DNA of 64,000 nucleotides from Ginglymostoma cirratum (Eukaryota): contig JAHRHZ010000078.1 of NCBI GenBank assembly GCA_024137785.1, positions 21,247,216 to 21,311,215 of the forward strand, given 5' to 3'. Numbering within the stretch: the first letter of the stretch is position 1; every line of letters starts with the position of its first letter. Below the pieces are notes generated by a model, which saw only the letters and a list, made by a program, of their open reading frames with translations, ran no database searches and was not told the DNA's origin. Below, in pieces: positions 1,240 through 60,277 of this stretch. The translations under genes were made by a program, and so were the position numbers.

Positions 1240-1267
1240 CAGTAAGAAGTGAATCTGAAATGCCATG
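1240..1267 (+). CDS. Cytoplasmic mini-exon of an upstream B7-like paralog ('paralog 0'; the rest of the gene lies before the window)
   Basis: Acceptor ttgtttcag|, donor |gtaggt. The exon and the following intron start (gtgtgatttcaaatatc) match the mini-exons at 36765 and 59415. Reads ~AVRSESEMP. Confidence 0.7.
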
Positions 1268-26749: not shown

Positions 26750-27045
26750 CTGGGAAAGTCCGCTGCCTGCTCGCACACATTCCATTTCTCCCGATAATCA
26801 AATCTTGCCCAGACAAACTCGCCTACGGTCCAGTCAGTTCGAAACAGAAAGTGTTTTCAGAAGCCCGAAGGAAAACGGGGAGCGCCAGCTGTGTTCTTTG
26901 CCTTCACCAGTTCAGACAGCCAGCAGGAGACTGTTTCACTGTTTGCACTTAGACAAGAGAACGGGGCGCAGGGAACTTCGCCGCTTTTGTGCCGATATCT
27001 CGGAATCGTTCTCAGAATTGTCAAGGCGTCCGATTATAAATGGTG
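26750..27045 (+). promoter_or_regulatory. Putative promoter of paralog A (kB-like, ISRE, GAS, TATA)
   Basis: GGGAAAGTCC 26752-26761; GAAACAGAAAGT 26841-26852; TTCTCAGAA 27009-27017; TATAAAT 27035-27041; locally CpG-enriched. Confidence 0.55.
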
Positions 27046-27059
27046 ACTTTCCTTGGATC

Positions 27060-27119
27060 AGATTGAATTTCGGATTAGTGCTGGGCTGGTCGGATTTCCA
27101 CAGATTGTTTGCAACAAAG
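27060..27119 (+). other. Putative non-coding exon 1 of paralog A (start uncertain)
   Basis: Donor caaag|gtacag is conserved in paralog B at 52895. The leader exon has an acceptor upstream of its ATG, so an upstream exon is needed. Confidence 0.55.
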
Positions 27120-28024
27120 GTACAGTTTGATGTTCAAAAACTATAAGAATATTTTTATTGACAGTTGTGCGAAGTGTGTGAACACTGGATACAATATAAC
27201 TGCAGAAACTGATCAGATTAGGGGATTGCTTTTTAAAAAATGAAACAAAACAGAAATGGAAACAGATTTTTTAAAAGAAATAAAATATCCTATCAATTGT
27301 CGCAATGCCTACGGAGTTTACAAAAAAAAATAAGAATTTACGGAAAAAAAATCACGACGACCAGGAATTTGTCTGTAGATCTCTGCACGGGAAAGCGGGC
27401 AGCTACAAAAAAAAAGGAAAAGTCCAAAATGTAGTTTATTGCTCTTTGGAACTCCACTAGTGAGGAATACTTACTTTGCAATTTGTATGAGGAAGCTACA
27501 GCTGCAGATGCTGGAGTCAGAGATAACACAGTGTGGAGCTGGAGGAACACAGCAGGACAGGCAGCATCATAGGAGCAGGAATGTTGAAGTCTTGGGTCGG
27601 GACCCTTCTTCAGAAATGGGTTTATATTTGTAATTTGCATGATTGCTTTATACAGGACAGAGTAATAGATTTCGGACGCAGTACCTTCTCATTGTGAGCA
27701 GTAGTGAGCTCCTCACTGATTTCAGATATGCACCAAACCTCCAAAATAAACACAGAGAATACTGGACAACGTCAGTGGGTCTGGCAGCATCTGTAGAGAG
27801 AGAAGCGGAGCTAACGTTTCCAGACTGGTACAACTCTGGTCATACCTCCAGAAGCTGGTTTTGCCCTGCAGGATGAGGTCATGTCTTGCAGACGGCGTTT
27901 GCAAAACCTAAACCTCTATCATCGACAGTCTCTGGGTTAAAATCTTAAAAGTTAAGCTCCAGCAGCCAGTATAACTATTTAGAAATATTCAAAGATTGTT
28001 CACGTGAGTCTGACATGGGTGGTG

Positions 28025-29335
28025 GGCGAGTTGTTAGAGGGAATCCTGAGGGACAGAATTTACATGAATTTGGAAAGGCAAGGACTGTTTAAGGAAAGTC
28101 AACATGGCTTTGTGCGTGGTAAATAGTGTCTCACTAACTTGATTGAGTTGTTTACTGAAGTAATGAAGAGAACTGATGAGGACAGAGCAGTGGACATGAT
28201 TTATATAGACTTTAGTAAGGTGTTTGACAAGGTTCCTCATGGTACACTGGCTGGCAAGGTTACAGCACATGGAATACAAGGACAACTAGCCATTTGGATA
28301 TAGGACTAGCTTGAAGGTAAAAGATAGAGGCTGGTGGTGGAGGCTTGCTTTTCAGACTGGAGACCTGTGACCAGATATGTGCCACAATGATTGGTGCTGG
28401 GTCCACTGTGTTTTAACATTTATGTAAATGATTTGGATATGAACATAAGAGGTGTGATTAGAATGTTTGCAAATGTCATAAAAATTGGAGGTGTAGTGGA
28501 CAGTAAAGAAGGTTATCTCACAGTACAATGGGATCTTGATCAGATAAATGTGAAGTGCTGCATTTTGAAAAGACAAATCAGGGCAGAACTTATACACTTA
28601 ATGGTAAGGTCCTGGGGAGTGTTGCTGAACAAAGAGACCTTGGAGTGCAGGTTCATAGTTGCTTGAAAATGGAGTCACAGGTAGATAGGATAGTGAAGAA
28701 AGTGTTTGGTATGCTTGCCTTTTTTCGTTCAGTGTAGCAGTTAGGAGGTCATGTTGCAGCTGTATAGGACATTGGTTAGGCCAGTTTTGGAATACTGCAT
28801 GCAATTCTGGTCTCCCTACTATAGGAAGGATGTTGTGAAACTTGAAAGGGTTCAGAAACGATTTGCAAGGATATCGCCAGGGTTGAGTGTTTGATCTGTG
28901 GGAGAGGCTAGATAGACTGGGGCTATTCTTCTCGGAGCGTCTGAGGCTCAGGCGTAACCTTATAGAAATTTATAAAATCATGAGGGGCATGGATAGGACA
29001 AATAGCCAAGGTCTTTTCCCTGGGATGGGGGACTCCAAAACTAGAGGGCATAGGCTTAAAGTGAGAGGAGAAAGATATAAATGGGACCTAAGGGGCAACT
29101 TTATCACACAGAGGTGGTTTGTGTATGGAAGAAGCTGCCGGAGGAAGTGGTGGAGGCTGATACAATAACAACATTTAAAAGACATCTGGATGGTTATATG
29201 AGTAGGAAGAGTTTAGAAGGATATGAACAAAATGCTGGCAAATGGGACTAGATTAATTTAGGATAATTGCTCGGCATGGGTGAGTTGGACTGAAGGAACT
29301 GTTTCCGTGCTGTACAACACTATGACTCTATAACT
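28025..29335 (+). mobile_element. 5'-truncated CR1 in intron 1 of paralog A
   Basis: RT motifs (DFSKxFDKVPH, VLGPLCF, EQRDLGVQVH) and tail tatgactctataactc; not seen at the equivalent site in paralog B. Confidence 0.9.
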
Positions 29336-30181
29336 CAAAATGAACTACAAATGCTTTGGGATGTTTAAACATGTCCTTCCTAATTGCTCATGATTCTTTA
29401 TTCTGTAAGTAGATGAGCAATAGAGAGAGCAGGATAATCTGGAGTTTACTCCTGATTTAACCAGTATTGTATTATCAGTTCAACTGAGAGGGAAATAAAC
29501 CCAACACTAAGTTCAGAACTTTAATTTATCTTTCACTGAAATTATGGTAATATCTGTGGGAATCACCAAATTTGGAGTCTACATATCAGGACGTTCAAAA
29601 TGATTGATGGTTATTTGGATTTAGACATCTCAGCACATGATATGGAGGCAGGATGTCCGATCCAGGATCAGACCATCCTTAGGTCTCGGATAGGATAACA
29701 CCAGGCTCTGAGTCAATGCTGCAGCCTTGTCAAGTCCCTGCCCAACTTAAAAGCCAAACCCATCAAACAGGGGCAGCTGGAAAGGGTCGGGGTGTTGGGG
29801 GGAAGTGGCCTGGCAACAAGACACCCTCTGTGGACTGAAAATGTCATTCAGCACATATGGAAATCTGCAATCTGAGCCAAACACTGCCCATCTCAGTCAA
29901 GTTTGAAGCCATGGCATTATTGCAGTGTCTCTTGCTATACTGTTTGATCGGTGATACATTCCAGAATTCTTGCTGTGAGAGTGGTTGGCATCTGCCACAA
30001 AAACATGTAAGTTATACACTACCATATAATAATTATGAGCATTCAAACCATTTCTACCAATGTAAATATATCTGATGGACTGGTTGTTAGTCATTAACAT
30101 TAATGAAAGAAATCTGATGCATAAATAAAGTGAAATCAGGTTAGGTTAACGTGTTTTCTGTATTATCCCTTAACAGGTGAA

Positions 30182-30260
30182 ATGAGTCTGGAAATGGTTT
30201 CATGCCATACAATACGTCTTCTTCCTGTCATCTTCTACATCCTTCCATCATTGTCAGACG
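30182..30260 (+). CDS. B7-like paralog A, signal-peptide exon (MSLEMVSCHTIRLLPVIFYILPSLSD; the ATG at 30194 is the one conserved in B)
   Basis: Acceptor taacag| at 30176, donor |gtaagt at 30261, phase 1, hydrophobic leader. Confidence 0.85.
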
Positions 30261-30351
30261 GTAAGTTCTAAGATGCTTTTCAACAAATAGCTCTATAGAA
30301 TACTGATTCCCACTGAAGGAATGTGAGTCAATGAAAATTATTGTTTTTCAG

Positions 30352-30666
30352 GTTTTTTGGATTTATTTTGTAACTCTCCGGTGACAGGAATATTTAACAA
30401 AGACACTAAACTACTGTGCACAGTCACTTCACAAGAGGATTGGAACTTGACAGACATTGTACTATGGAAACAGAAAGATGTAGAAGTGTTTAACTACAAG
30501 AAAAGTGTCAATGAAGTTCAGGGTCGGATTAAATTACTTCATTCAGGATCTCAAGAGATATTACTGGTGATCCAGAACACACAGTTGTCAGATAGTGGGC
30601 AATATCAATATTATTTGCAGACAACTGTTGGTCACAAAAGTGCTGACATCAATTTGAAGGTTAAAG
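30352..30666 (+). CDS. B7-like paralog A, IgV exon
   Basis: 315 nt, phase 1-1, tttttcag|...|gttggt. V-set motifs: B-strand LLC, C-strand W, GRI, LVIQNTQLSDSGQY, G-strand LKVK. Confidence 0.9.
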
Positions 30667-32950: not shown

Positions 32951-33019
32951 TGGTGCAAGGGATGTTGGTGAATTCCGGGATATCCAGTGAATGGCAAGTT
33001 GTTCCGGGAAAAGTATATT

Positions 33020-34375
33020 TTACAATGGGGCAGGAAATTAATCAACCAACATTTGGATAGTCATGGTCTGATTAGCAATAGTCAGCGTGGATTTGTGTGC
33101 AGAAAGTTGTGTCTGACAAATCTTTTAGAGTTTTTCGAAGAGGTAACCAAGAGGATAGATGAGGGTAGGGCAGTGGATGTTGTCTATATGGACTTTAGTA
33201 AGGCCTTTGACAAGGTTCTGCATGGCAGGCTGGTCATGAAAGTTAGGTCGCATAGGATCCAGGGAAAGCTAGCTAATTGGATTCAAAATTGGCTCTATAT
33301 TAGGAAGCAGAGGGTGATAGTTGAAGGTTGTTTCTTGGATCGGAGGCCTGTGACTAGTGGTGTGCCATAGGGGTAGGTGCTGGGATCTTTGTTATGTGTT
33401 ATTGACATAAATGATCTGGATATGAATGTACAAGGCATGATAAGTAAGTTTGTGAATGATACAAAATTAGAAGGTATCGTTGATAGCAAAGAAGGTTATC
33501 AAAATTACAGAGGGCTCTTAATCAGATGGGGAAGTGAGCTGAGGATTGGGAAATGCAGTTCAATACAGATAAGCGTGAGGTGTTGTACTTTAGAAAGTCA
33601 AACCAAGGTAGGACTTATACAGTGATGATAAGGTCCTGAGGAGTGTTTTGGAACAGAGGGACCTAGGAGTTCAAGTACATAGTTTGCTGAAAGTGGTGTC
33701 ATATGTGGACAGGATGGTAAAGAAGGCATTTAGCATGCAGGTCTTCATCGGTCGAGGCACTGAGTACAGGAGTTGGGACGCTGTGTTACAGTTGTATAAG
33801 TCATTGGCGAGGCCACACTTGGAGTATTGTGTACAGTTTTGGTCACCCTGTTATAGAAAAGACATAGTTAAACTGGAAAGTGTGCAAAGAAGATTTACGA
33901 GGATTGTAGTCCTACAAGGACTAGTAGATCTGAGTTATTGGGAGAAGTTGGCCAGGATAGGACTTTATTCCTTGGAACATAGGAGAATGAGGGGTGACCT
34001 TATTGAGGTGTATAAAATCATGAGGGGTAGTGATAGGATGAATTCATATAGCCTTTTTCCCAGGAATAATGAATTGAAAACTAGACAGTATAGGTTTACG
34101 GTGAGAGAGGATAGAGGATAGGACCTGAGGGGCAACTTCTTCATGTAGAGAGTGTTGAATATATGGAATGGGCTGCCAGAGAAACTGGTTGAGGCAGGTA
34201 CAATAGCAACATTTAAAAAAAAACATTTGAATAGGTACATGGATGAGAAGGGTTTAGAGGGATATTGACCAAATGTGGGCAATTGGAACTAGCTGAGTGA
34301 GCACTATGGTCAGCATGGACTAGTTTGGGCCAAAGGGCTGTTTCCATGCTGTATTACTCCATGACTCAATGACTT
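33020..34375 (+). mobile_element. 5'-truncated CR1 in the V-C intron of paralog A
   Basis: CLTNLLEFFEEVT, YMDFSKAFDKV, RPHLEYCVQFWSP, tail atgactcaatgact. Confidence 0.92.
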
Positions 34376-34872
34376 GATGAATGTTTGTGATGCCACAGAA
34401 GCAGGATACCTAATTAATGTGATGAGTTTACTAAGATACTGCAAGGAAACCTATTAGTCTTATGGTGAGAAATCCTCCAAAAAATTTGACATATCCCAAA
34501 GTTAACCAAAAAAAGGATTCAGTCCTATGTTTCAACAGGATAACCTCTCACTTCTCTAAACAGCAATGGATTTATGTCCAACCAGTTCAAACTTGCTTCA
34601 CAAAATAAGCCCTTTACTTCAAGAATGAATGATAATCACTCTTCCAACAACATAATTTTGCTGCTAAACTGTGCCAGGAAACAACTGACTAGACAAATGG
34701 TGATAGTGGCATAGTGACCATGTTTATTGGATGAGAATTCCAAGAGACCCATGTTAACCTCAGTGATTATGGGTGAAAATCCCACTCTAACAACTGGTAG
34801 AATTTAACTTCATTTTCTAAATCTGAATTATGAAGCTCATTCCACTAATAATAATGCAATCATCATTTTTAG

Positions 34873-35157
34873 CTCCATACAACATGATTGTTTTCCCAAA
34901 CATCGTATCGTCGAGAATAGTCAGTGTCACTTGTGAAGCAACTGGATATCCACCGGGTCGGATGCACTGGTTCTTGAACACAAAAACGAACCTCACATCC
35001 AATGCTAATATTAGTATTGAAGAAACACCACAGGGACTGTACAAGATCAGCAGCACACTTCAAACCGAGGAAGAAATAGAAACCCCAGAAGGTGTTTATA
35101 CTTGTGCCATGTGGAGCATAGATGACAGTAAATATGAGGTGAAGAGAAATATTTCAT
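34873..35157 (+). CDS. B7-like paralog A, IgC exon
   Basis: 285 nt, phase 1-1, tttttag|...|gtaagt. APYN...VTCEATGYP...HW...GLYKISSTL...YTC. The V-C junction LKVK|APY is typical of the B7 family. Confidence 0.9.
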
Positions 35158-35691
35158 GTAAGTTCACCACATTTATGCTTGAAAGGATTTTGGAAAGTAC
35201 ATATTTAAAGAATTAATATGTTTCATTTATTTGCAAATATGGATCATATTGCAAAATCATACTTATTACTCAAGACTATTTTACGCTGAGAACTTGTGGA
35301 ACATTATTTTTAAATTATTGCAGTCCTTTTCCTCACTGTTGTTTAAAGGTCAACTTTGTTATTGTAATGAACAGAGTCGTAGTTGGGTATATCTATGCCC
35401 AGCCCAATCAGAATCTACGTGGCTGGGCTGAGAATTAAGATTGATCATTAATTATTCATGCTGTAGCGCCAGGTTAGCTACGACCCAAATAATCAGCACC
35501 GTCTTCTCATTCTATACAAAATGTATAAAATGAGGTTTTATTGTACTTTACAAATCTGTTTATTGCAACCTAGTTCTAAGGAGTACAAGATGAAAAACTA
35601 CAACTCTTAGTCTCATCTTAGCAATATTGTAGTTCTATTCTACCAAGCATTTAATTAATTAAATATTTCTCACTCACGTTTTCTGTTGCAG

Positions 35692-35835
35692 TCTCTCATT
35701 CAAATTCTACCTCTGCTGAGAGTTCTGGAAAGGAAAGGAAAAATGCTTTCGTAATTGTCCCTGTGATTACAGCATTACTTCTTGTTGCATTAGTAATCTC
35801 TGCTGTTCTGCAATTTAGGAAAAGATCGCATGCAG
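35692..35835 (+). CDS. B7-like paralog A, stalk + transmembrane exon
   Basis: 144 nt, ttgcag|...|gtatga. SHSNSTSAESSGKERKN-AFVIVPVITALLLVALVISAVLQF-RKRSHA. Confidence 0.88.
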
Positions 35836-36764
35836 GTATGATGGTTTTGGATTCTGGTTCCTTTTAAAACTCTTGATTAATACATAAATTATGACTTTTT
35901 TTGCTTTAAACACATCTTATGATCCCTTATTTCAATTATGCTTATAATCAGGAAACCAATGCACTTTAACCTCATTATGTGACAACTGTACAAGTTTCAA
36001 GGCAAAATAAAAAGAAGTAACAGAATCTCCAACATTCTAAACTGTTTTAAATTCTGTCCATCCTAATTTCCTTGCTAACATTTTGCAACTTATATAAGCA
36101 CTTGGCTGAATTATTGGAAAACAAATACTCTTATATTACTGCTGAGGAAATGTTTGCTGAATAATTTGCTAAATAGTTTGAAATGTAGAGATATTTCAAG
36201 CTATGAACATTGCCTAATTAGTTACAATCTTTGATCAAAGAAAGAATAGATAATATATAAATGTCGTATGAGCCAAACATTCACTCTCCCTGAGCTCCCA
36301 CAATGTTCTAAAATTAACTGTAGCCTTCTTATTACGTATGCTGATATAAGTCACTTTAAAGCAAAATCTCAAATCAAATTCTCCCACTGTGAATGGGAAT
36401 TTATAATTCCAAATTGCTAGTTCAGATACTAGCAACTTGGTAACATAATAATTATGATACTGTGGCCTCCTAATCAAATTAGAGAACTACAACTTTATAC
36501 GTTGACTGATTGCAATTGTCTTGGAACCATTTGGTTATAAAATTATTCTTAGTGTTACACAAAGGAGAGGCGCAAAATAAGTTGGTAAAATTTAATTTTT
36601 ATGACTGTTATTGTGATCATCCAGAGATTATTGCCTCTTCCATGATTGAGTTTGGAACCAAAAAAATTAATAAACTGCAAATTTTTGCAGCAGTTTAAGA
36701 TAGTTCAAAACAATTGCTATATGCCAGAAACAATGTATTAATTGTTGTATTGCTTTAGTTTCAG

Positions 36765-36886
36765 AAATTACAAAAGAATCTGAAACCCTGATGCTAAGTT
36801 TAATTACAAATACCTGCACATTTTTGAAAGTCTTCTATCACAGTTTTTATAAATCATATTTTCTTCTTTTAACATATGACAATTGA
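36765..36886 (+). CDS. B7-like paralog A, cytoplasmic exon with retained last intron (EITKESETLMLSLITNTCTFLKVFYHSFYKSYFLLLTYDN*); full protein ~310-314 aa
   Basis: Acceptor tttcag| at 36764. The ancestral donor reads ctaagt (36794) and the ancestral acceptor reads aacat (36875). The frame is open to TGA 36884-36886. Confidence 0.6.
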
Positions 36887-37684
36887 CCAGAGACCTAATG
36901 TTTGATAGCAGTTGCAGAGATTAATTCTTATTTCTACTTGCAGCAAGTCCACTGATGGCAGCAACTTTAAGAAAACATGATACGATATAGCAACCAAATC
37001 CTATCTTATGTGAATGAGGGAAGATGAATTTAAACCATGAGTTATTTCACATACTGTCACTTCCTGTATTATGATCACTTCAAAACTGATTTTAATGCAG
37101 CTCTCGTCCAGAAAAATACACCAACTGTTTTATGGCATTGGACTGAACTCTTCACTAATCCTTTCTCTGCAAAGAAACAATGCTTCACATTAGTTTTCTA
37201 TGGACACCATCAGCCAAACACAGTGTTCAAATGCAAAAGTCTACATGCTGAAGAACTTGGCTTTCAATCCAGGCTCGTGTTTGTCAAGAAGATCCCTATT
37301 TTGCAGCAGAGGTAAAAATTGGATCAATCACAGTGCGCTGGGAAAGGAAAAGAATATTTTCAACACAGTTAACTCTGAACATCTACTTGTGGTTTTCTTA
37401 CAGACATACTGTGAATGGTTTTGACTGTTGGACTGTATTTCTCACTTGGGTTAAGAGGAATCGTGGCTGCAGGAAATTAACTTGAAAAACTGAAATTTCA
37501 GTATTTTCTGAATTGTAAACACTGATCATTATGTTTGTACACTAATTACTTTAAATCACTGATTTAGCTGAATAACACATGTATATACATTTTTGTAAAG
37601 TATTAATTAATTTTTGCTGTGCCCTTGTTTTGTGTTAACAGATAATGTAAAACAAATGTAGATCTCCTGAAGTTTAATAATGAG

Positions 37685-39115
37685 CAGGCAAAATCTTACC
37701 AGGCTGTAAACAATATGGGTTGTGGCAAGTTGAGTATTAGGATCAGTCAAGATGGTCATCTCAATGTCGAGATCATCTTGCTACAACCTTTTCCCTTTAT
37801 CAAGCAGCATGGCAGGATCCTTGCCTGGGAACAGCGAGTTCCCGGTTGACAATGTCCATTGCTTGTTATATAACTTGTCGACAGCCCAGACCATCATGGG
37901 ATGTGATCTTACCAAATTTGCTGCACAAATTGGCCTTCAGGAAAACTTGCCATGGAAACCAGAGTAGGTTCTTGGTGGGTTTGACTGGCTACTGGCTCCA
38001 GACGATCTGTGTGAGCAATGAATGGTTCCTCCAGTGCTTCCCTGATGATTTGGAGAAGTCAAGGAGTTGTCCTCTGTTGAGGATGGGACTGGGTGCTGGG
38101 GGGAAATTAATTCATCTGCAGGACATAAGATGCAGAAGGCATTACAGCCAGTGGTTTGTTGTGTTCGATGCCTGGTTAATGCGACTCTTGTGCTGGAATG
38201 ACAAGTTTTACTTCCTTCTGGACTTGTCAACCCCACAGAAGCGGTCCGTTTTTTCTCCTGCTAGATTGAGAATTCTTTCCTTGGAACAGGTGAAGACATG
38301 CACATCTGGTACTTCCCTCATTGTGTGGCTTCACTCAGCCCTGTTATGGGATGTCTTCTTCTGTAATGACATAAAGGAGCAAATTAATTAGAATCAAGTG
38401 GCTGGCACAACTTTTGGGGCTGGTGCACTTGAGGAAAGTGAGGAGTTCCAAGGGAGTGCGGGATTGGTGGTGTATGAGGTTGGTTGGGTAATGAGAGCTC
38501 GTGAGAGTAGATGTTGTATGCATCACAAGGTTAAGCAGAGCATTAGAGTTGGTGGGAGGTGGTGGGGGGGGGGGAAGTGGCCCAGTTATATGAGAGGTAG
38601 CTCACCCTGGAGGATTGGAAAAGATCATTGTCCTTCTTCCTGCACTGTTGCCTAATTCTCATCAATCTGGAGATGTCACTGATCCAGGTGCTCATCTTCG
38701 ACCAGCTGGCATAGTGCAGTGACTTGACTTCATCTTCTCTCTTTGAGAAAAGGACACCTCCACTGTTCATCATCCCATCCGCAAGGACCTTCAGGTCCCT
38801 GTCCGACATGTGTGGTGCCACTTCCTCCTTCTCTGCCCTCTTTCCTGGCTTCTAATATTGCAATCAGGACAAGTTCCAGATGGCAGCATTCCTGCAGGTA
38901 TATAGCAGGCTTTGAAAGATGGCACTGTCCAAAGGATGCTGGTCTTATGGAAGACATCGCTGAGTGGCAAGTTCCTGTGTGAACAGTGCATGGTAAGATG
39001 GTGCGAAATCCGATATGAATCTCACTACAAAGGCTCAAATGGCAATAAAGCAGTAAGCTTGGTATGATATGGCAAGAAAACTTGCTGGGATTCGCAGTGA
39101 AATTCATTCTGCCAA
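37685..39115 (-). mobile_element. Harbinger-type element remnant with Myb/SANT-like ORF (38543-38821)
   Basis: APHMSDRDLKVLADGM...VLF...W..MSTWISDISRLMRIRQQCRKKDNDL matches the Myb/SANT-like trihelix pattern of the Harbinger accessory protein. Confidence 0.65.
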
Positions 39116-42440: not shown

Positions 42441-43431
42441 ATCAAGTTGAATTGAACTATTAATCACAGAAAACTGTTTAAAATCAGTGGAGGCTATTTA
42501 AATACATGCAGGAAATCACAGATGGATGGGAATTATTATGTGACTAAGTCAACGGAAGACAGCTTGGAAATACACTAGCCAACAACTAACAGTTGATCAT
42601 GCACCCTGCAAATGAAAGAAATATTCAATAATGATTGTGCATGAGGATACTTCCAGAGCAACCAAAGTATAAGGTGAATCCAAAGGAGTGATGTCATTAG
42701 TAGTATAATCACTGAGAAGAGATGTCCCACTAGAAGCTCGGAGGTAGTAGGAACTGCCAATGCTGGAGTCAGAGACAACACAGTGTGGAACTGGAGGAAC
42801 ACAGCAGGCCAGGCAGCATCAGAGGAGCAGGAAAGCTGACATTTCGGGTTGGGACCCCTCTTCAGAAGAATGTTCCTCCAGCTCCATACCGTGTTATGTC
42901 CCACTAGAAGCTGCTTGATCTTGATCAGATCAGGTCTAATTGGTCTGTGGTAAACATAGTCTGACCATCTCGTGTTGCTATATGTTTTTGTTTGAGTACA
43001 CACAAATCAATTGTTTCATTTTCTTCCAATCGCCTTACTATAATAAAAATTGCTTGACTTACAACGTATTTTGTCAGTTAGAATTCTCGATCTCAGCAAC
43101 CTTACAGAGAGCAGCTCAATAAATCTGAATTGTTGTTGTGGATGTGCTCTTCCAGAGCAGAAAAAGCCATATGGTGTTGAGACTGCTGCTGCTCCAGACT
43201 TCTCTCTTATCCTCTCTTCCAGTGAAAAATTTTAGCCATGTGGGAAGATTTGATAAAATGACACTGTTTTGTTTGGGACAGCAAAGGATGAATAAAGATT
43301 TAATTAAAGTGTATGAAATTATGTGGAGTCAAGATAAACTGCAAAGCAAGGATCTATTTCACTTAGTGGTGATGCCAATAATTCAGGACATAGGTTCCAC
43401 GTAACGTACAGAAAGATTAACTTGTAACAAA

Positions 43432-46248: not shown

Positions 46249-47238
46249 ACTAAAGCGGAGTTGATGGGAATTTATCTTTGCCCAGACAATGCTGAAAGTC
46301 TGGAATTTGCTGCCAGCAAAGATAATAGAGGCAGAACCCTCAGAATATTAAAGCAATGCTTGGGATATGTGTTTGAAATGTGATAACCGATAAGATTACA
46401 GACCAACAGTTAGATAGTGAACCTAGACTGTGTAAAATCACTATTATAGTGTAAAATCACCATTATAGGCATGCTGGGCTGACTGGTTTTCTGTGCAGTC
46501 AATTTTCTGTGCTCTCCTACTGGTCTATTCAAGGTCTTTCCAATTGAGACCTGACAATTACTGCCTCCCTTAAGTCCATTTCCACTTAAATCCTGACAGG
46601 CATGCTTCCCTCCGATTTCCTTTTTCACTAGCATTGTAAATAAATACCTCTTTTTAGCAATCAGATATTTGAGTTTTAGTTCTGCCACTGCTACCTTCTC
46701 TGCTTTGCTAGGCAAACCACTATCAACACTTCAATTCTCAAATTATTCATCCCCGCCCCACTCCGTGCTCTCTAACTGTCCATCAATTCCATCTTCTTAT
46801 TCTGTCAAGCTCCTCGAATGCCATCATCAGCCTCGGGTCTGTGGCTGTTAATTCTATAACTCTTTGTTTGAATTATTTCATCCTACCCTAGTGAAAAAAA
46901 AACAGACTTCCCCAAAGTCTTGGAGAACATTCTCTGTCACTGTTAGTGACTGTGGTACATTATTCCTCCATCTGTGTCTATGGGATGAACCTGACTTGTT
47001 TAAACTCAGCTACTTTCATTCATAGAATCACAGGATCGATATAGTTCAGCACAGTTCTGTCCAGCTGCATCTCTGAAGAAGGATCAGACCAGTGTTTTCT
47101 TTTTCTTTATTCATTCACAAGATGAGGGCGTCGCTAACTGGGCAGCATTTATTGCCTGTCCCTAATTGCCAAGAGTCAACCACATTGCTGTGGATCTGGA
47201 GTCACATGTAGGGCAGACCAGGTAAGGATGGCAGTTTC

Positions 47239-48495
47239 AGAGATAGTAGGAGCTGCAGCTGCTGGAGAATCTGAGATAACAAGGTGTAGAGCTGGATGAA
47301 CACAGCAGGCCAAGCAGCATCAGAGGAGCAGGAAAGCTGACGTTTCGGGCCTAGACCCTTCTTCAGGAAGGGGGAGGGGAAGGGGGCCACCCAAAGGTTG
47401 CAGGAACAGCACCTCATATTCCTCATATCCCTCACACCCCGGTCCCGCAATAATAACCAAAAAAGACTCCCCCTCATCCTCACGTACCACCCCACCAACC
47501 TCCGGATCCAACGCATCATCCTCCGACACTTCCGCCATCTGCAATCCGACCCCACCACCAAAGACATTTTTCCCTCCCCACCCTTATCTGCTTTCTGGAG
47601 GGACCACTCCCTCCACGACTCCCTTGTCCGCTCCACACTCCCCTCCAGCCCCACCACACCCGGCACTTTTCCCTGCAACCGCAGGAGGTGCTACACCTGC
47701 CCCCAACACCTCCTCCCTCACCCCAATCCCAGGTCCCAAGAAGACATTTCACATCAGGCAGATGTTCACCTGCACATCTGCCAATGTGGTATACTGCATC
47801 CGCTGTACCCGTTGTGGCTTCCTCCACATCGGGGAAACCAAGCGGAGGCTTGGGGATCGCTTTGCAGAACACCTGCACTCAGTTCGCAACAAACAACTGC
47901 ACCTCCCAGTCGCGAACCATTTCAACTCCCCCTCCCATTCCTCAGATGACATGTCCATCCTGGGCCTCCTGCAATGCCACAGTGATGCCACCCGAAGATT
48001 GCAGGAACAGCAAATCATATTCAGCCTGGGAACGCTGCAGCCCAATGGTATCAATGTGGATTTCACAAGCTTCAAAATCTCCCCTCCCCCAACTGCATCC
48101 CAAAACCAGCCCAGCTCATCTCCGCCTCCCGAACCTGTCCTTCCTCTCACCTATCCCCTCCTCCCACCTCAAGCCTCAGCCCCATCTCCTACCTACTAGC
48201 CTCATCCCTCCCCTTGACCTGTCTGTCCTCCCTGGACTGACCTATCCCCTCCCTAACTCCCCACCTATGCTCACCTTTACTGGCTCCATCCCACCTCTTT
48301 GACCTGTCTGTCTCCTCTCTATCTATCTTCTCCTCTATCCATCTTCTATCCACCTCCCCCTCTCTCCCTATTTATTTCAGAAACCCCTTCCCCTCCCCCA
48401 TTTCTGAAGAAGGGTCTAGGCCCAAAACGTCAGCTTTCCTGCTCCTCTGATGTTGCTTTGCCGGCTCTGTTCATCCAGCTCTACACCTTGTTATC
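47239..48495 (+). mobile_element. 5'-truncated Penelope-like element (GIY-YIG end + pLTR, with inverted pLTR at the 5' end)
   Basis: NVVYCIRCTRCGFLHIGETKRRLGDRFAEH (GIY-YIG). Perfect 15-bp TSD AAGGATGGCAGTTTC at 47224-47238 and 48496-48510. Confidence 0.93.
47339..47366 (-). ncRNA. Minimal type I hammerhead ribozyme motif in pLTR
   Basis: Minus strand CUGAAGA-A-GGGU(CUAG)GCCC-GAAAC-GUC: intact core, helix II and palindromic ACGU helix III. Confidence 0.7.
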
Positions 48496-52830: not shown

Positions 52831-52834
52831 AGAT

Positions 52835-52895
52835 CAGTTTGAACCTCGATTTAGCGCTGAGCTGGTTAGATCTCTACATATTGCTTACATCAAAG
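52835..52895 (+). other. Putative non-coding exon 1 of paralog B (start uncertain)
   Basis: Homologous to 27060-27119; donor caaag|gtacag. Confidence 0.55.
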
Positions 52896-54184
52896 GTACA
52901 GTCTGACATTCAGAAAATATAGAATTTTTTTTGCTGACAGCTGAGTAAAGAGTGTGTGTGCTGTGGGTATAATGTTGCTTGGTTTGCTTAGTCGGATAGA
53001 CAGAACTTGGGTGGAACACGGTGGAAAGCCAATGATAAAGAAACATAGAGTATAGGAGCAGAAGTCGGCCATTCAGCCTTTCGAGCCTGCTCAACCATTC
53101 AATATAATCATGGAGACTATTCATCATTAAGTATAATTGATGTGGGAAATTCTGCAAATTCAGAAAAATACATATTCACAGACATAGAAAAAAAACAAAA
53201 TTTCACTGGAGAAGCAACTAAAAGAGATCTGGTCTTCAAACAAAATTAAAAGTGAAAGAAGTTGAAGAGACTGGGCAGCTATTAAAACAGGTTATGAAAA
53301 ATAAAATATATTGGACTAACAGAAGGTGAAAATGTTAACGAAATTAGAAGAATCCAGGCTGCAAAACGATCATTAAAAAAAGCCAAAAATCTTTAAGGAT
53401 TAAACCAGTAAATAACAAGAAGATTTGAACCATTCAAAGCAGCCAAGTACAAGATCAGTCAGTTTCTCATCTAGTTTGATATTTGGCTGCAACACAACTG
53501 GATAGCAACTGCAGTCCATGAAAGAAATGCTTGACAACATGAACAGGAATGAAAATTTCAGAAATTGTTGGAGAAACTCAGCAGGTCCGGCAACGTCTGT
53601 GGGAAGATATCAGAGTCAAAGCCCTGAGTACAGTTACTCTTAATCAGAATTGTTAGTTGTTAAAAAATGGCGGTATTTATGCTGAAGCCAAAACTGTGAC
53701 GGTGGGGGAGAGGTATATGGGAGGACGGGTAGGGGACTATGGGGAGAAGTGAGCAAATAGCTAGAGATGGACTCCAGAGAGAAAGAGAGAGAGAGTTAGA
53801 GGTATGAAAGGGGTTGGTAAACAAGGAGATTATGGATAGCAGGCCAGGACAGAAGCAAAGCTGAATAAGTGATAATAAATACAATTCCCACACTGGCTCA
53901 GGTCACCATGAAGGGTCCTCCTTCTCAATCTCATCTCCTCACTCGAAGCGTTTTATTTTATTATTGACTCGGGGATGTGGGAGTCAGTGGCTGGGCCAGC
54001 ATTTATTTGCCGTCCCTAATTGCCCTTGCGAAGACAGTCGCGAGCTGCTTGCCTTCTTGAACCACTGCAGTCTGTGTCATTTATTTGCTTTCTAGTACTT
54101 ATTAATTTACTTCTGAATAGTTTGCTAGGCCATCTCAGAGGACAATTGACAGTCAACCACATTGCTCTGGACCTGGAGATAGGA

Positions 54185-55263: not shown

Positions 55264-55330
55264 ATGGTTTCATATCGTACGATAAGTCTCCTCCCTGCCA
55301 TCTTATGCATCTTTCTGTCATTTGCACAGT
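55264..55330 (+). CDS. B7-like paralog B, signal-peptide exon (MVSYRTISLLPAILCIFLSFAQ)
   Basis: Acceptor aaacag| at 55246, donor |gtaagt at 55331; 91-nt intron, as in A. Confidence 0.85.
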
Positions 55331-55421
55331 GTAAGTTCTGGAATGCTTGTCAATATACAGTTCCATTGAACACTGATTCTCACTGCACTCATGACAGTTA
55401 ATGAAAGTTATTGTTTTCCAG

Positions 55422-55748
55422 GTTTCTTCAGACTAAATTGTCAGTCTTCAGTCACAGGAATATTAAACAAAGAAACTAAACTACCATGTATGTTAACTTC
55501 AGAAACGAGGATCAGTTCAATACACATTGAACTTTGTAAGAAGGAAAAAGATGGAAAAGTAGAAATTGTGTTTACCTCCAGGAAAAGCGTTAATAGAGCT
55601 CAGGGTCGGATTAAATTAGCTCACCCGAGATCTCAAGACATGTCACTGGTAATCCAGAACACACAGTTGTCAGATATTGGGACATACCAATATTCTTTGG
55701 AAACAGATATTGGTCGCAACATTAGTGAGATTACATTGCAGGTTAAAG
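55422..55748 (+). CDS. B7-like paralog B, IgV exon
   Basis: 327 nt, phase 1-1, ttttccag|...|gtgagt; ~54% aa identical to the V domain of A by manual alignment. Confidence 0.88.
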
Positions 55749-56557: not shown

Positions 56558-56901
56558 CTCTATACAACGTGACTATATTCCCAAACATTGTATCAACGAA
56601 AATGTTAAGTGTCACTTGTGAAGCAATTGGATATCCACTGGCTCAGATTCACTCGCTCTTGAATGGAACAAAGAAGTTTACATCCGAGGCTAATACTAGG
56701 AGTATAAAATCAGCAGAGGGACTGTATAAGATCATCAGCACATATCAAATCAAAGAGAAAATAGATGTCTCAGAAAGTAGTTATACATGTGCCGTGTGGA
56801 GCATGGAAGAGGGTCTATATATGGTGCAGAAACGTCTTTCACATAAGTTCACAATGCTTATTCTTCAAAGGAGTTTGGAAAGCAAATGCTTAAAGAATTA
56901 A
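56558..56901 (+). CDS. B7-like paralog B, IgC exon with read-through tail (donor lost at 56843); predicted secreted 245-aa product or incipient pseudogene
   Basis: Acceptor tttttag|; VTCEAIGYP, GLYKIIS, YTC. At the position of A's |gtaagttcac it reads |ataagttcac. Frame open to TAA 56899-56901. Confidence 0.75.
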
Positions 56902-57112
56902 CATGTTTCATTTATTCTCAATATGTGCACAATATTGTAAGATTATATTCAACGTTTGTGACTATTTGCACTGAAATGTTTCTGGGGATCTTATTTTTAA
57001 AACATGGCAGCCCTTTTCCTCACAGAATTGTTTAAAAGTCATAGTTGGGTACAGTTATTCCCAGACCACTCAAAATCGACATGGCTGGTCTGAGAATTAA
57101 GATTGACTGTTA

Positions 57113-57737
57113 CAGCAAGAACTGCAGATGGAGTCAGAGATAACANNNNNNNNNNNNNNNNNNNNNNNNNNNNNNNNNNNNNNNNNNNNNNNNNNNNNNN
57201 NNNNNNNNNNNNNNNNNNNNNNNNNNNNNNNNNNNNNNNNNNNNNNNNNNNNNNNNNNNNNNNNNNNNNNNNNNNNNNNNNNNNNNNNNNNNNNNNNNNN
57301 NNNNNNNNNNNNNNNNNNNNNNNNNNNNNNNNNNNNNNNNNNNNNNNNNNNNNNNNNNNNNNNNNNNNNNNNNNNNNNNNNNNNNNNNNNNNNNNNNNNN
57401 NNNNNNNNNNNNNNNNNNNNNNNNNNNNNNNNNNNNNNNNNNNNNNNNNNNNNNNNNNNNNNNNNNNNNNNNNNNNNNNNNNNNNNNNNNNNNNNNNNNN
57501 NNNNNNNNNNNNNNNNNNNNNNNNNNNNNNNNNNNNNNNNNNNNNAGAGATAACACAGTGTGGAGCTGGAGGAACACAGCAGGCCAGGCAGCCTCAGAGG
57601 AGCAGGAAAGCTGCTGTTTCGGGTCAGGACCCTTCATCAGAAAAGACTTCTGACGAAGGGTCCTGACCTGAAACATCCTCTTTCCTGTTCCTCTTATGCT
57701 GCCTGGCCTGCTGTGTTCCTCCAGCTCCACACTTTAT
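57113..57737. mobile_element. Inverted pair of pLTRs (PLE-derived palindrome) spanning the assembly gap
   Basis: 16-bp TSD TTAAGATTGACTGTTA at 57097-57112 and 57738-57753; ~90-nt inverted arms centred near 57645. Confidence 0.8.
57146..57545. other. Assembly gap (400 N)
   Basis: Run of n. Confidence 1.
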
Positions 57738-57979
57738 TTAAGATTGACTGTTAACTGTTACTGCTGCAGTTCCAGGTCAATTATGGCCCAAACACTGAGC
57801 ACCCGCTTCTCATTCTGTATAAAATGGGGTCTCATTTTACAGGTCTGTTTTTTGCATCCTAGTTCTAATGGTACAAGATGAAGTGCTTCAACATTTAGTC
57901 TGCCTTAGCAATGTTTTAATTTCCGTACTATCAAGCATTTAATTAATTAAAAATTTCTCACCCACATTGTGTGTTTCAG

Positions 57980-58123
57980 CCCTTCATCAAAGCTCCAACC
58001 CTGATGGCAGTATCAAAGAGGAAAAGAAAAATATTCTCGTAATAGTCTTCTTGATTATTACATTTCTTTTTACTGCATTAATAATCTCTGCTGTTCTGCA
58101 AGTTAGGAAAATATCATATACAG
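57980..58123 (+). CDS. B7-like paralog B, stalk + transmembrane exon
   Basis: 144 nt, tttcag|...|gtattt. LHQSSNPDGSIKEEKKN-ILVIVFLIITFLFTALIISAVLQV-RKISYT. Confidence 0.8.
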
Positions 58124-59414
58124 GTATTTTGATCATTATGGTTATTATGTAATTATGATTATCATATTAATTATGACATCATCTTATGTCTTGAAACACT
58201 TTTTATTATCCTTATTTTGAATATGCTTGTAATCTGGAAACCGGTGCAGTTTAACCCCATTATATGCCAAATATACAACTTTCAAGACTCAATAAAAAGA
58301 ATTGACAGAATCTCCAACATCTGAACATTTTCACATTCAGTCATTCCAATTTCCTAGCTAACATTGTATGTTTTACATAAGCCCTGTGTTGAAATATTGG
58401 GGGGAAAAAGTACATTTAAATCACTGAATGAGAAGCATTTGCTGAATAGTTGCCAGAGGGAAATTTAGAGGTACCTTACGTTATGAATGTTGCCTAATTA
58501 GTTAGAATCTTTTCTCAAAGAAAGAATGGATAACATATACATAAAAGCTATAAGTATTGACTTGTCCTGAGCTCCCACAAAGAAGAGATAGAAATGTTTA
58601 GGTGAGTCAGACCGAACTGCTGTGGAGACATTCCATTCAGTCATTTCCATTGAACATCACATCACGGATTTGACATTCAGTCACCCTTTGATGTTCCAAG
58701 ATATAAATTTCAGACATATGATGTTTCGGATAGGTCAAGGAAAATAGAGAAGGAAGTAAACATTTTTCTTTTAAAATCCTCAATTGTTTCATAATTCATA
58801 ATTGTAGTTTAATACCTGTGACTGATTTGCTAGGCTGACCCAGAGGACGATTCAGAGTCAACTAATTGGTGCGTTCCTTGAATTATATATAGGACCATAA
58901 CTTTCCTCCCCAAAAATACAAGTTCAGCATTTAGTACAGTGATCTAAAATTACCAAAGCCTATCCATCACCTATGCTGGTACTAGCCCCTTGAGGAAAAT
59001 CTAATATCAAATTCTCTCACAGTGGGTTTTTTGAACTTCTGAAAAACCAGTCCAGATGTAAAGCAATTTGGTAACATAAACATTATGATACTGGAGCTTC
59101 CTAGTTACGTTAGACAATTGCAACTTTATAGATTGACTGATTGCAATTATTTTGGATCCATTTGGTTATAAAAATATTTTTATTGTTAGACAAAAGAGCA
59201 GGGTAAATTATCTGAATGTCAATTCAGTAAAATATGATATTTTTATACCAGTTAATGTTTTTGTGTTCATTCAGAGATTACTGCCTTTTCTGCAATTGAG
59301 TTTGGAGCTACAAGAATGGACACAATGCAAATTTTTGCAGTAGGTTGTGTTAATTCAAATGAAATGTTATATGCCAGAAACAATGAATTTATTATTACAT
59401 TGCTTTACTTTCAG

Positions 59415-59443
59415 AAGTTGGAAGAGAAGTCAAAATCCCATTG
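59415..59443 (+). CDS. B7-like paralog B, cytoplasmic mini-exon (EVGREVKIPL)
   Basis: tttcag|29 nt|gtaagt. Confidence 0.75.
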
Positions 59444-59519
59444 GTAAGTGTGATTTCAAATATCTGCAAACTTTTGAAAGCCTGGTCTCAATCTTTTAAA
59501 AGTTTTCTTCTTTTAATAG

Positions 59520-59558
59520 GTATCAGGTGACCACAGGACTAATGTTAACAAAATATAG
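59520..59558 (+). CDS. B7-like paralog B, last coding exon (VSGDHRTNVNKI*)
   Basis: Acceptor ttttcttcttttaatag|; aligns codon for codon with 36876-36905 in A; the last 3 aa come from an inserted repeat. Confidence 0.65.
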   Translation, partial: VSGDHRTNVNKI

Positions 59559-60277
59559 GACTATGGATGCTGGAAATCTGAAACCGAAGCAGAAATTGCT
59601 GGAGAATTTCAATGTGTCTGGAGAGAAAGCAGATGAACGCTTTGAGTCTAATGAGTCTAATAAACCTTCTTCAGAACTTAAGACCAATGTTTAGTAATGA
59701 TTGCAGTGAATAAATCTTATTTTTAACTTATAAACAATATCCTGTTTACAACAGGTTGCGACATCCTGTATCAACTATGTCCTATCATGTGAATGATTGA
59801 AGCTGAAGTTAGAACACATGGGTTATTTCACACATTGTTACTTCCTGTATAGTGATTACTGCAAATATTTTTAACAGTTCTCATCCAGCATAATACACTT
59901 CACTAACTGACGGAATTGGGCTGAACTCTTCACTATTCTTTATAGAGAAAAGAAATAATGTCACATATTAGTTGTCTGTGAACACCATTGGTCAAACATT
60001 GCATTCACGCACCAATACCTACATGCTAAACACCTTGACCTTCTATCCAGGCTCCTGCTGCCAAGAAGATCTCTGTTACTCTGAAAATATATCTGTGGAT
60101 TGATCACAGAAATATTGTGCAAAATTTTATCAATTGGACACTTTTTTCATTTGATTAATAGAATAGAATAGCTTTTATTGTCATGTGCAATTGAATGAGT
60201 GCAGTGAGAAATTTGAAATGTCACTGCTTTTGTACAATTTTAGGTACCGGGTAACTAGGTATAAATACTTTAAAAGA

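What the first reader, a model, noticed from the sequence alone, without database searches (positions are those of the whole stretch)
26750..60100. Tandemly expanded B7/PD-L1-like IgV-IgC gene cluster with divergent membrane and soluble members
Seen: two full paralogs can be assembled with consistent splice phases (leader 79/67 nt, 91-nt intron, V 315/327, C 285, TM 144, 29-nt cytoplasmic exon, last exon), plus a third 3' end at 1.2 kb. Established: the 5'UTR-leader-V-C-TM-cyt-cyt exon plan and the V/C junction 'LKV-APY' are characteristic of B7 ligands (PD-L1, PD-L2, B7-H3). Inference: this is a lineage-specific expansion of co-signalling ligands in a cartilaginous fish, with each copy remodelled differently at its splice sites. 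Orthology cannot be assigned from sequence alone.
Basis: partly seen in the sequence, partly recalled or inferred. Interest (0 to 1): 0.85.

Follow-up and report, generated by a model that had tools for sequence, protein, structure and literature searches.

The report
Shark B7-like ligand gene cluster
The window holds three tandem shark genes of a B7-type immune-ligand family that no searched paper describes; one is transcribed as a membrane protein, one has a broken splice site, and none is the shark PD-L1 gene.

Summary
Copy A (27.1-38 kb) and copy B (52.8-59.6 kb) each have leader, IgV, IgC and TM exons in phase 1. A third paralog's tail exon lies at 1240-1267.

Transcript contigs from three studies join V|C, C|TM and TM|36944 of copy A at 100% identity. 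Copy A is therefore an expressed 289-aa membrane protein. Its 29-nt exon is a skipped relic, replaced by a new terminal exon.

Copy B is open and in frame through six exons (296 aa). Its IgC donor is AT instead of GT, and it has lost an otherwise invariant IgC tryptophan. I could not test its expression, so "soluble member" is unproven.

The N gap lies inside a transposon insertion in copy B's C-TM intron and touches no exon.

A profile of 15 elasmobranch homologues hits CD276 and PD-L1 about equally, then butyrophilin, PD-L2 and CD80. It is B7-family, but not PD-L1, which is a different published nurse shark transcript.

The three-gene cluster is shared by carpet sharks, and the V-C-TM family was found only in sharks and rays. 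Its V domain never has the F-strand cysteine and always has an extra A-strand cysteine. Related species carry only automatic annotations.

The parts
1240..1267 (+). Copy 3 (third paralog): penultimate 28-nt cytoplasmic exon, reading ..VRSESEMP. The rest of the gene lies upstream of the window.
   Evidence: AG|..|GTAGGT borders. 77% nt identity to B's 29-nt exon region. The peptide matches the tails of bamboo shark P0061 (VRRESEMPM) and whale shark P0063 (LRSESETQ). The match is weak because it is short.
27056..27119 (+). Copy A: 3' part of the non-coding exon 1, with candidate donor AAAG|GTACAG. The exon start was not mapped.
   Evidence: Paralogous block 27056-27180 ~ 52832-52956, with the donor conserved in both copies. 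Transcript contigs carry about 445-452 nt upstream of the leader exon (worked out from record positions). This exon itself had no reads laid on it.
30177..30260 (+). Copy A leader exon (ATG at 30182; 79 coding nt; ends in phase 1).
   Evidence: Sequence. tblastn match to residues 1-22 of P0001. Runs hold 0.70-0.77 of the words of 30177-30666, as expected if the 91-nt intron is spliced out.
30352..30666 (+). Copy A IgV exon (315 nt, phase 1-1).
   Evidence: Pfam V-set/I-set. 84% identical to whale shark P0058. Its last 30 nt appear as the loose end joined to the C exon in three runs.
34873..35157 (+). Copy A IgC exon (285 nt, phase 1-1).
   Evidence: Pfam Ig_3/ig/C2-set. PDB hits CD276, PD-L2 and PD-L1. 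Joint 35157|35692 with GT..AG in contigs of runs X1 and X6.
35692..35835 (+). Copy A stalk plus transmembrane exon (144 nt, phase 1-1).
   Evidence: Hydrophobic stretch FVIVPVITALLLVALVISAVL. Joints on both sides in contigs.
36765..36793 (+). Copy A relic of the ancestral 29-nt cytoplasmic exon. The donor is CT instead of GT, and the mRNA skips it.
   Evidence: Alignment with B, borders, no contig coverage, and a joint that jumps over it.
36876..36905 (+). Copy A relic of the ancestral last coding exon (..TIDQRPNV stop). The acceptor AG is lost.
   Evidence: Alignment with B and copy 3. Compare the P0001 tail ITIDEMTDV. Not covered by transcripts.
36944..38399 (+). Copy A new terminal exon. 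It codes for ..A-SPLMAATLRKHDTI, stop at 36988-36990, then a 3'UTR of at least about 1 kb (coverage goes on to at least 37945, with patchy cover to 38399).
   Evidence: Joint 35835|36944 with GT..AG in X1 and X6. Contigs run to 37671, 37690 and 37945. Translation.
52832..52896 (+). Copy B: candidate non-coding exon 1, 3' part (donor AAAG|GTACAG).
   Evidence: Paralogy with copy A only. No RNA evidence.
55264..55330 (+). Copy B leader exon (67 coding nt). It starts at the MVSY methionine that most orectolobiform orthologs use.
55422..55748 (+). Copy B IgV exon (327 nt, phase 1-1).
   Evidence: Pfam V-set 2.4e-12. Open frame.
56558..56842 (+). Copy B IgC exon (285 nt). The following donor is AT (56843-56844) instead of GT. 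The otherwise invariant IgC Trp is Ser.
   Evidence: Clusters with bamboo shark P0060 at 98/94.
57097..57753 (.). Transposon insertion in copy B's C-TM intron. It holds the assembly gap 57146-57545 and is bracketed by a 16-nt direct repeat.
57980..58123 (+). Copy B stalk plus transmembrane exon (144 nt, phase 1-1).
59415..59443 (+). Copy B 29-nt cytoplasmic exon (EVGREVKIPL), with intact AG and GTAAGT borders.
   Evidence: Matches P0060 EIRREFEIPM.
59520..59558 (+). Copy B last coding exon (VSGDHRTNVNKI stop), found by homology.
   Evidence: Matches P0060 VSSDHRINV. No RNA evidence.

Best explanation
The window carries three head-to-tail paralogs (copy 3, A, B, all on the + strand) of a B7-family subfamily. 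The V-C-TM form was found only in sharks and rays.

Each gene follows the classical B7 plan: a non-coding exon 1, then leader, IgV, IgC, stalk/TM and short cytoplasmic exons.

- Copy A is transcribed and spliced into a 289-aa type I membrane protein. In the nurse, whale and zebra shark lineage its old two-exon tail (a 29-nt exon plus a final exon that mostly ends in Val/Ile) was disabled by splice-site loss. A new, unconserved terminal exon replaced it.
- Copy B keeps the ancestral six-exon frame. It has a GT>AT change at the IgC donor and lacks an invariant core tryptophan. It is either a young pseudogene or is now forced into a TM-less product.

Inferred, not shown: the proteins act as cell-surface ligands for an unidentified Ig-superfamily receptor. 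The fast non-synonymous divergence between paralogs reflects diversification of that interaction.

The V domain is atypical. The B-F disulfide is replaced by an invariant A-strand/B-strand cysteine pair, and the C-strand Trp is not conserved.
For: - Exon anatomy and phases.
- Duplication of the whole unit, introns included.
- Transcript contigs of 2008 and 2274 nt, 100% identical to the window, join 35157|35692 and 35835|36944 at GT..AG. Their loose ends equal the end of the V exon. This holds in 3 runs from 3 studies. The poly-A RNA-seq run X12 has 5 reads, all on exons or 3'UTR.
- Exon borders agree exactly with independently predicted orthologs.
- Family profile against PDB: human CD276 1.5e-39 (about 68 bits per V-C unit), mouse CD276 1.9e-20, PD-L1 3.7e-20, BTN1A1 4.2e-16, PD-L2 5.5e-16, CD80 2.6e-12.
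- AF2 model with mean pLDDT 80, showing two beta-sandwich domains and a TM helix. Foldseek top hits are CD276, PD-L1, BTN3A, ICOS-L, B7-H6 and PD-L2.
- Every V-C-TM homologue found is from a shark or ray.
- Domain trees place A with whale and zebra shark genes (99/96 and 99/97). B's C domain goes with bamboo shark P0060 (98/94).
- The cysteine pattern holds in 25 of 25 V domains.
- Between A and B, dN is 0.31-0.39, against intron divergence of 0.25-0.31.
Against: - No binding partner, cell type or function has been tested.
- The runs X1, X2 and X6 are only guessed to be RNA. The spliced, 100%-identical contigs argue for cDNA, but a very young retrocopy is not formally excluded.
- Copy B's expression and the reality of its G>A donor change rest on one assembly.
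- No tree with canonical B7 members could be built, because no reference sequences were reachable by id.
- Flanking synteny was not available.
- ω>1 for the C domain rests on few sites and I ran no significance test.
Confidence: 0.8

Rival explanations
1. The genes are the shark PD-L1/PD-L2 orthologs, as NCBI's automatic names for the relatives suggest.
For: Automatic names 'programmed cell death 1 ligand 1/2-like'. PD-L1 is among the best PDB profile hits. The exon plan is the same.
Against: A different nurse shark transcript (TSA GIWU01097433), and catshark and skate proteins with the canonical Y-R-C motif and clear PD-L1 similarity, are the published PD-L1. That paper found a second PD-L gene only in tetrapods. 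CD276 scores as well as PD-L1. By my manual register from the shared KV.APY junction, PD-L1 Asp122 aligns to Lys in copy A.
Confidence: 0.03
2. The family is a diverged, expanded set of CD276 (B7-H3) co-orthologs in elasmobranchs.
For: CD276 is the top profile hit, and the V/C junction aligns with it (kvkaPYslP against QVAAPYSKP). NCBI names several members 'CD276 antigen'. The copy-3 type C domain is the common type across sharks.
Against: Only about 21% identity to CD276 in the structural alignment. PD-L1 scores the same. CD276 is reported as present in all gnathostomes and far better conserved than its relatives (PMC13262535), which does not fit this fast-evolving family without the F-strand Cys. 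I could not check whether sharks have a separate canonical CD276.
Confidence: 0.12
3. Copy B is a hard-wired secreted decoy. With the IgC donor destroyed, the mRNA reads into the intron and ends after 19 extra residues (..HKFTMLILQRSLESKCLKN), giving a soluble V-C protein.
For: GT>AT at 56843. The read-through frame is open for 19 codons and stops at the same place as in copy A. TM-less models exist in relatives: epaulette shark P0057 skips the TM exon, and horn shark P0005 ends after IgC. All other B exons are intact.
Against: There is no RNA evidence for B at all. An open 19-codon stretch is not unusual, and its 80% identity to A is close to the 74-79% of the surrounding introns. B has lost the invariant IgC Trp, which points to decay. 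The downstream TM and tail exons are still intact, and that is not expected for a long-standing secreted gene.
Confidence: 0.25
4. Copy B is a recently inactivated pseudogene, or the AT donor is a private allele or an assembly error of an otherwise normal membrane-protein gene.
For: Donor loss plus W>S at an invariant core position. Similar decay signs occur in single paralogs of other species (Heterodontus P0005 C>Y, Pristiophorus P0066 GYP>AYR). There are no frameshifts or stops in 891 nt, so any inactivation is young.
Against: Branch lengths of B and its bamboo shark ortholog are similar (0.18 against 0.14 in C). The whole frame is preserved.
Confidence: 0.5

Closest known systems
CD276 (B7-H3)
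   Same: Best profile match. It has a V-C unit, the same V/C junction (..V.APYS.P..), the GYP..W motif in IgC, a type I membrane topology and a short tail.
   Different: About 21% identity. The V domain here lacks the F-strand Cys and the C-strand Trp. The family evolves fast and is multi-copy, whereas CD276 is reported as highly conserved (PMC13262535).
PD-L1 / PD-L2 (CD274 / PDCD1LG2)
   Same: Profile score equal to CD276 (PD-L1 3.7e-20, alignment running through the TM). The exon plan is the same: non-coding exon 1, leader, V, C, TM, two short cytoplasmic exons (the PD-L exon plan is from my own knowledge). Tandem duplicates.
   Different: The true shark PD-L1 is a separate gene (PMC12151841). 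The canonical V disulfide is absent here. By my manual register from the shared KV.APY junction, Asp122 of PD-L1 is not conserved.
Butyrophilins (BTN1A1, BTN3A)
   Same: V-C ectodomain fold and sequence similarity (BTN1A1 4.2e-16). NCBI names the ray members 'butyrophilin subfamily 1 member A1-like'.
   Different: There is no B30.2/SPRY domain. The tails are 10-30 residues long.
Uncharacterised multi-V proteins of bichir, reedfish and the teleost Hoplias (P0020, P0026, P0098-P0100, P0002)
   Same: P0020, P0026 and P0002 share the F-strand Y-x-Y motif in place of Y-x-C. The A-strand and B-strand cysteines are visible in P0020 and in the P0002 segment I read. They are the closest V-domain hits outside elasmobranchs.
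   Different: Their architectures are V-V-TM or long V arrays without the B7-type IgC domain. I did not inspect the motif in P0098-P0100. Whether they are true relatives or convergent was not tested.

Membership tests
B7 family (V+C co-signalling ligands) | Type I membrane protein: signal peptide, ectodomain, single TM, short tail without further domains | tested here: met
   Leader and TM exons. The AF2 model shows an N-terminal helix and a TM helix at 245-269. Tails are 10-30 residues.
B7 family (V+C co-signalling ligands) | Membrane-distal IgV plus membrane-proximal IgC, each on its own phase-1 exon | tested here: met
   Pfam V-set, and Ig_3/ig/C2-set/C1-set. Phases. Joints in RNA contigs.
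B7 family (V+C co-signalling ligands) | Sequence and fold similarity highest to B7 members among solved structures | tested here: met
   By sequence, CD276 and PD-L1 come first, then BTN1A1, PD-L2 and CD80. Foldseek gives the same set plus ICOS-L and B7-H6, but nectins and TAPBPR are also close.
B7 family (V+C co-signalling ligands) | Canonical B-F intradomain disulfide and C-strand Trp in the IgV domain | tested here: not met
   The F-strand position is Tyr (21) or Phe (4) in 25 of 25 V domains. Trp is present in 2 of 25. An A-strand Cys is invariant instead.
B7 family (V+C co-signalling ligands) | Binds a CD28/CTLA4-, NKp30- or related Ig receptor | not testable with these tools
   No receptor candidate was examined. 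The orphan CD28-family receptors of Chondrichthyes are described in PMC11599192.
B7 family (V+C co-signalling ligands) | Location in an MHC-paralogous region | not tested
PD-L1 (CD274) orthologs | Being the best reciprocal match and syntenic gene of PD-L1 in the species | tested here: not met
   A different nurse shark transcript is the published PD-L1, and its sequence is unlike copies A and B. Synteny was not tested.
PD-L1 (CD274) orthologs | Conserved PD-1 contact residues (F19, D122 per PMC12151841) | tested here: inconclusive
   A Phe follows the signal peptide in at least 90% of members. The column I aligned to D122, by eye from the shared KV.APY junction, is variable (Lys in A). No structure-based alignment was made.
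CD276 (B7-H3) orthologs | High conservation across gnathostomes, single conserved gene | tested here: inconclusive
   Identity is about 21% and the family is multi-copy and fast-evolving. The presence of a separate shark CD276 could not be checked.
Butyrophilins | Cytoplasmic B30.2/SPRY domain (most members) | tested here: not met
   The tails are short. There is no such exon downstream of the TM in A or B.

The most novel reading that the evidence does not exclude
These genes belong to an old, undescribed B7-like lineage. Its mark is a rewired V domain: an A-strand/B-strand cysteine pair in place of the B-F disulfide, and no core Trp. Related V domains survive in bichirs and some teleosts. 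In sharks and rays the lineage supplies the missing ligands for one of the orphan CD28-family receptors (CD28HL1-3, CD28X) or NKp30-type receptors, and the paralogs co-diversify with those receptors.
Probability: 0.15. Interest if true: 0.7.

Novelty: new member of a known kind. Interest (0 to 1): 0.45.

Why it matters
Several CD28-family receptors of cartilaginous fish have no known ligand (PMC11599192). B7-like genes in shark genomes carry misleading automatic names such as PD-L2-like, CD276 and butyrophilin-like.

This work does three things:
- It shows that this cluster is a separate, multi-copy, fast-evolving B7 subfamily with an unusual V-domain cysteine pattern.
- It gives a transcript-verified gene model for one nurse shark member.
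- Together these give comparative immunologists a concrete candidate ligand family to test, and a warning against calling these genes PD-L1, PD-L2 or CD276.

It is not a surprise in kind. Lineage-specific B7 and butyrophilin expansions are common.

Tried and rejected
- Single-exon searches against PDB were too weak to classify the V exon. I replaced them with a profile of database orthologs.
- The search for homologous proteins with P0001 and with the family alignment returned only elasmobranch family members and no canonical B7. I therefore could not build a tree with CD80/86, ICOSL, CD274, CD276, VTCN1, HHLA2 and NCR3LG1.
That ruled out orthologous DNA, dN/dS along single lineages, a check of B's donor in bamboo shark, and flanking synteny.
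- The ESM Atlas look-up gave only generic V-C IgSF clusters such as butyrophilin, OX-2 and CD80.
- A search for copy 3's TM exon in 1-1240 found nothing credible. It lies upstream of the window.
- There is no AATAAA or ATTAAA between 36991 and 38100, so copy A's poly-A site is not defined.
- I rejected PD-L1 orthology.
- I rejected the read-through 'Tyr-rich tail' for copy A, because the transcripts skip that stretch.
- I rejected any effect of the gap on an exon.
- Exons were searched one by one by reference, and full-length work used database orthologs.

Full report
**What is in the sequence**

The window has one N run, at 57146-57545. Open frames with Ig-domain character lie on the + strand at about 30.4, 34.9, 55.4 and 56.6 kb. 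Reading the borders base by base gives two gene copies.

| Exon | Copy A | Copy B |
|---|---|---|
| Leader | ATG 30182-30260 (79 nt) | ATG 55264-55330 (67 nt) |
| Intron | 91 nt | 91 nt |
| IgV | 30352-30666 (315 nt) | 55422-55748 (327 nt) |
| IgC | 34873-35157 (285 nt) | 56558-56842 (285 nt) |
| Stalk/TM | 35692-35835 (144 nt) | 57980-58123 (144 nt) |

Every Ig and TM exon starts and ends in phase 1.

A self-comparison shows that the whole unit is duplicated, introns and upstream DNA included. Roughly 23.9-37.3 kb matches 43.2-60.1 kb at 72-79% identity, broken up by LINE, SINE-like and Penelope-like insertions.

A third tail exon lies at 1240-1267.

**The gap**

The N run lies between copy B's IgC and TM exons. 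The DNA to its left (to 57106) and to its right (from 57738) aligns to positions 35444 and 35435 of copy A, which are continuous there. The extra DNA in B is bracketed by the 16-nt direct repeat TTAAGATTGACTGTTA, at 57097-57112 and 57738-57753. Its right part is an inverted pair of a SINE-like element that occurs many times in the window.

The gap is therefore inside a transposon insertion in an intron. No exon or frame crosses it. I made no attempt to supply its letters.

**Transcripts**

Runs of the same organism hold 0.70-0.77 of the sampled words of 30177-30666. That is the share expected if the 91-nt intron is absent.

I laid 34400-38399 on four runs. Contigs of 2008 nt (X1) and 2274 nt (X6), with no differing letters, join 35157 to 35692 and 35835 to 36944. 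Both joints have GT..AG ends. In X1, X2 and X6 the part of the contig that runs off before 34871 ends with the last 30 letters of the V exon.

A true poly-A RNA-seq run (X12) gave only five reads, all on the C exon or the 3'UTR.

Copy A is thus expressed as leader-V-C-TM-terminal exon: 79+315+285+144+47 nt, or 289 codons. The old last exon (36876-36905..TIDQRPNV) has lost its acceptor. The mRNA skips both.

The real tail is ..RKRSHA-ASPLMAATLRKHDTI. The acceptor at 36944 has no AG in copy B.

The runs X1, X2 and X6 are only guessed to be RNA. The spliced, identical contigs make cDNA the simplest reading.

**Copy B**

By homology with the bamboo shark protein P0060, B continues with a 29-nt exon (59415-59443, EVGREVKIPL; intact AG and GTAAGT) and a last exon (59520-59558, VSGDHRTNVNKI). 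The total is 891 nt in frame, or 296 codons.

Its only structural defect is AT in place of GT right after the IgC exon. It also has Ser where all 24 other family members have the core Trp of the IgC domain.

I had no reads call left for B. Whether it is silent, secreted or still spliced is open.

**Relatives**

A full scan of 1.84 billion representatives with the V exon of copy A found about ten proteins of 230-300 aa with the V domain at the N-terminus. All are from sharks, skates or rays. Their automatic names range from 'PD-L2-like' and 'PD-L1-like' to 'CD276 antigen', 'butyrophilin 1A1-like' and 'hemicentin-2-like'. Word-indexed searches added more, again only elasmobranchs.

tblastn of these proteins onto the window reproduces my exon borders exactly.

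Separate V-domain and C-domain trees show:
- Copy A groups with whale shark P0058 and zebra shark P0059 (99/96 and 99/97). That group is sister to the bamboo and epaulette shark genes P0001, P0052 and P0057.
- Copy B's C domain groups with bamboo shark P0060 (98/94).
- The tail at 1240-1267 matches the third type, P0061 and P0063.

The three-gene set therefore predates the split of bamboo sharks from the nurse, whale and zebra shark group. It is not a nurse shark peculiarity.

The ancestral tail (29-nt exon plus a last exon ending ..TDV..TQV or ..INV) is kept in bamboo shark A-type genes. The predicted whale and zebra shark proteins end differently (..SHQVH and ..SHAALI). This suggests that the tail remodelling happened in the nurse, whale and zebra shark lineage and that the new tail is not conserved.

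**Which family**

Single exons gave only weak hits. A profile of 15 full-length relatives scored against PDB as follows:

| PDB target | E-value |
|---|---|
| Human CD276 | 1.5e-39 (two V-C units, about 68 bits each) |
| Mouse CD276 | 1.9e-20 |
| PD-L1 | 3.7e-20 |
| BTN1A1 | 4.2e-16 |
| PD-L2 | 5.5e-16 |
| CD80 | 2.6e-12 |

The V/C junction aligns with CD276 (kvkaPYslP against QVAAPYSKP). An AlphaFold model of whale shark P0058 (mean pLDDT 80) is closest to CD276, PD-L1, BTN3A, ICOS-L, B7-H6 and PD-L2, with nectins and TAPBPR close behind.

This places the genes in the B7/butyrophilin V-C group, nearest to CD276 and PD-L. It does not make them orthologs of either.

They are not PD-L1. Kondo et al. 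2025 (PMC12151841) list the nurse shark PD-L1 from TSA GIWU01097433. It is a different sequence with the canonical Y-R-C motif. They found a second PD-L gene only in tetrapods.

A CD276 co-ortholog reading remains possible at low odds.

**Unusual V domain**

In 25 of 25 V domains the F-strand cysteine position is Tyr or Phe. Cysteines in strand A (column 6) and strand B (column 22) are invariant. The C-strand Trp is present in only 2 of 25.

I infer that an A-B disulfide replaces the usual B-F one. This is untested.

The F-strand Y-x-Y motif also occurs in uncharacterised V-V-TM or multi-V proteins of bichir (P0020, P0026) and the teleost Hoplias (P0002). The A- and B-strand cysteines are visible in P0020 and in the P0002 segment I read.

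**Rates**

Between A and B:
- dN is 0.31 (V), 0.33 (C) and 0.39 (TM).
- dS is 0.38 (V), 0.18 (C) and 0.26 (TM).
- Intron divergence is 0.25-0.31.
- ω is 0.82 (V), 1.86 (C) and 1.48 (TM).

Averaged over both lineages, amino-acid change is as fast as neutral change, while the fold-defining residues stay fixed. That fits diversification of a ligand family. The C-domain ω>1 rests on few sites and I ran no significance test.

**Mechanism**

- Shown: the gene structure, transcription and splicing of A, family placement, orthology within carpet sharks, the cysteine pattern, and B's defects.
- Inferred: surface display as a ligand for an Ig-type receptor. Candidates are the orphan CD28-family members of Chondrichthyes (PMC11599192).
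- Open: B's fate.

**Limits**

- No canonical B7 reference sequences were reachable by id.
- No synteny was available.
- The species (nurse shark) is taken from earlier notes of this scan. It agrees with the tree position next to whale and zebra shark.
- Earlier notes on this same window had raised the B donor loss, the cysteine pattern and A's splice losses. This report tests them.

Noticed in passing
window 35158-35216 and 56843-56901: If the IgC donor is not used, both copies read on for 19 codons and stop at the same position (A ..CKFTTFMLERILESTYLKN, B ..HKFTMLILQRSLESKCLKN). Nucleotide identity is 80%, close to the 74-79% of the neighbouring introns, so there is no clear sign of constraint.
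   Followed up: partly
window 47427-48090 and 63338-64000: Two copies of a repeat are 96% identical. Their open frame has a weak GIY-YIG nuclease match (E 8.5e-4, below Pfam's cut-off), which suggests a young Penelope-like retroelement.
   Followed up: partly
window 2889-3024, 21009-21108, 27500-27620, 40506-40593, 42737-42868, 47237-47385, 48384-48495, 57546-57738, 60278-60454: A SINE-like element of about 100-130 nt occurs at least ten times in the window at 80-95% identity. An inverted pair of it flanks the assembly gap on the right.
   Followed up: no
window 9313-12121, 28068-29335, 33051-34374, 43430-46235: LINE fragments with reverse-transcriptase frames (Pfam RVT_1 at 32987-33367 and 43975-45177). 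One fills most of copy A's 4.2-kb V-C intron. The B copy's V-C intron is only 0.8 kb.
   Followed up: partly
proteins P0020, P0026, P0098-P0100 (bichir, reedfish), P0002 (Hoplias): In bony fish proteins built of V domains only (V-V-TM or arrays), P0020, P0026 and P0002 have the F-strand Y-x-Y motif in place of Y-x-C, and the A- and B-strand cysteines are visible in P0020 and in the P0002 segment read. In bichir they sit as a gene cluster (LOC120536729-39). I did not inspect P0098-P0100 for the motif.
   Followed up: partly
proteins P0057 (epaulette shark) and P0005 (horn shark): Predicted TM-less forms of family members. P0057 joins the IgC exon directly to the 29-nt exon, which stays in frame because the TM exon is phase 1-1. 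P0005 ends right after IgC and also lacks an IgC cysteine.
   Followed up: no
C-termini of family members (alignment A1): Seven of the 15 aligned tails end in Val or Ile, and three of them (..TDV, ..TQV) have Thr at -2, resembling a class I PDZ-binding end. Copy A has abandoned this exon. Copy B has three extra residues after ..TNV.
   Followed up: no
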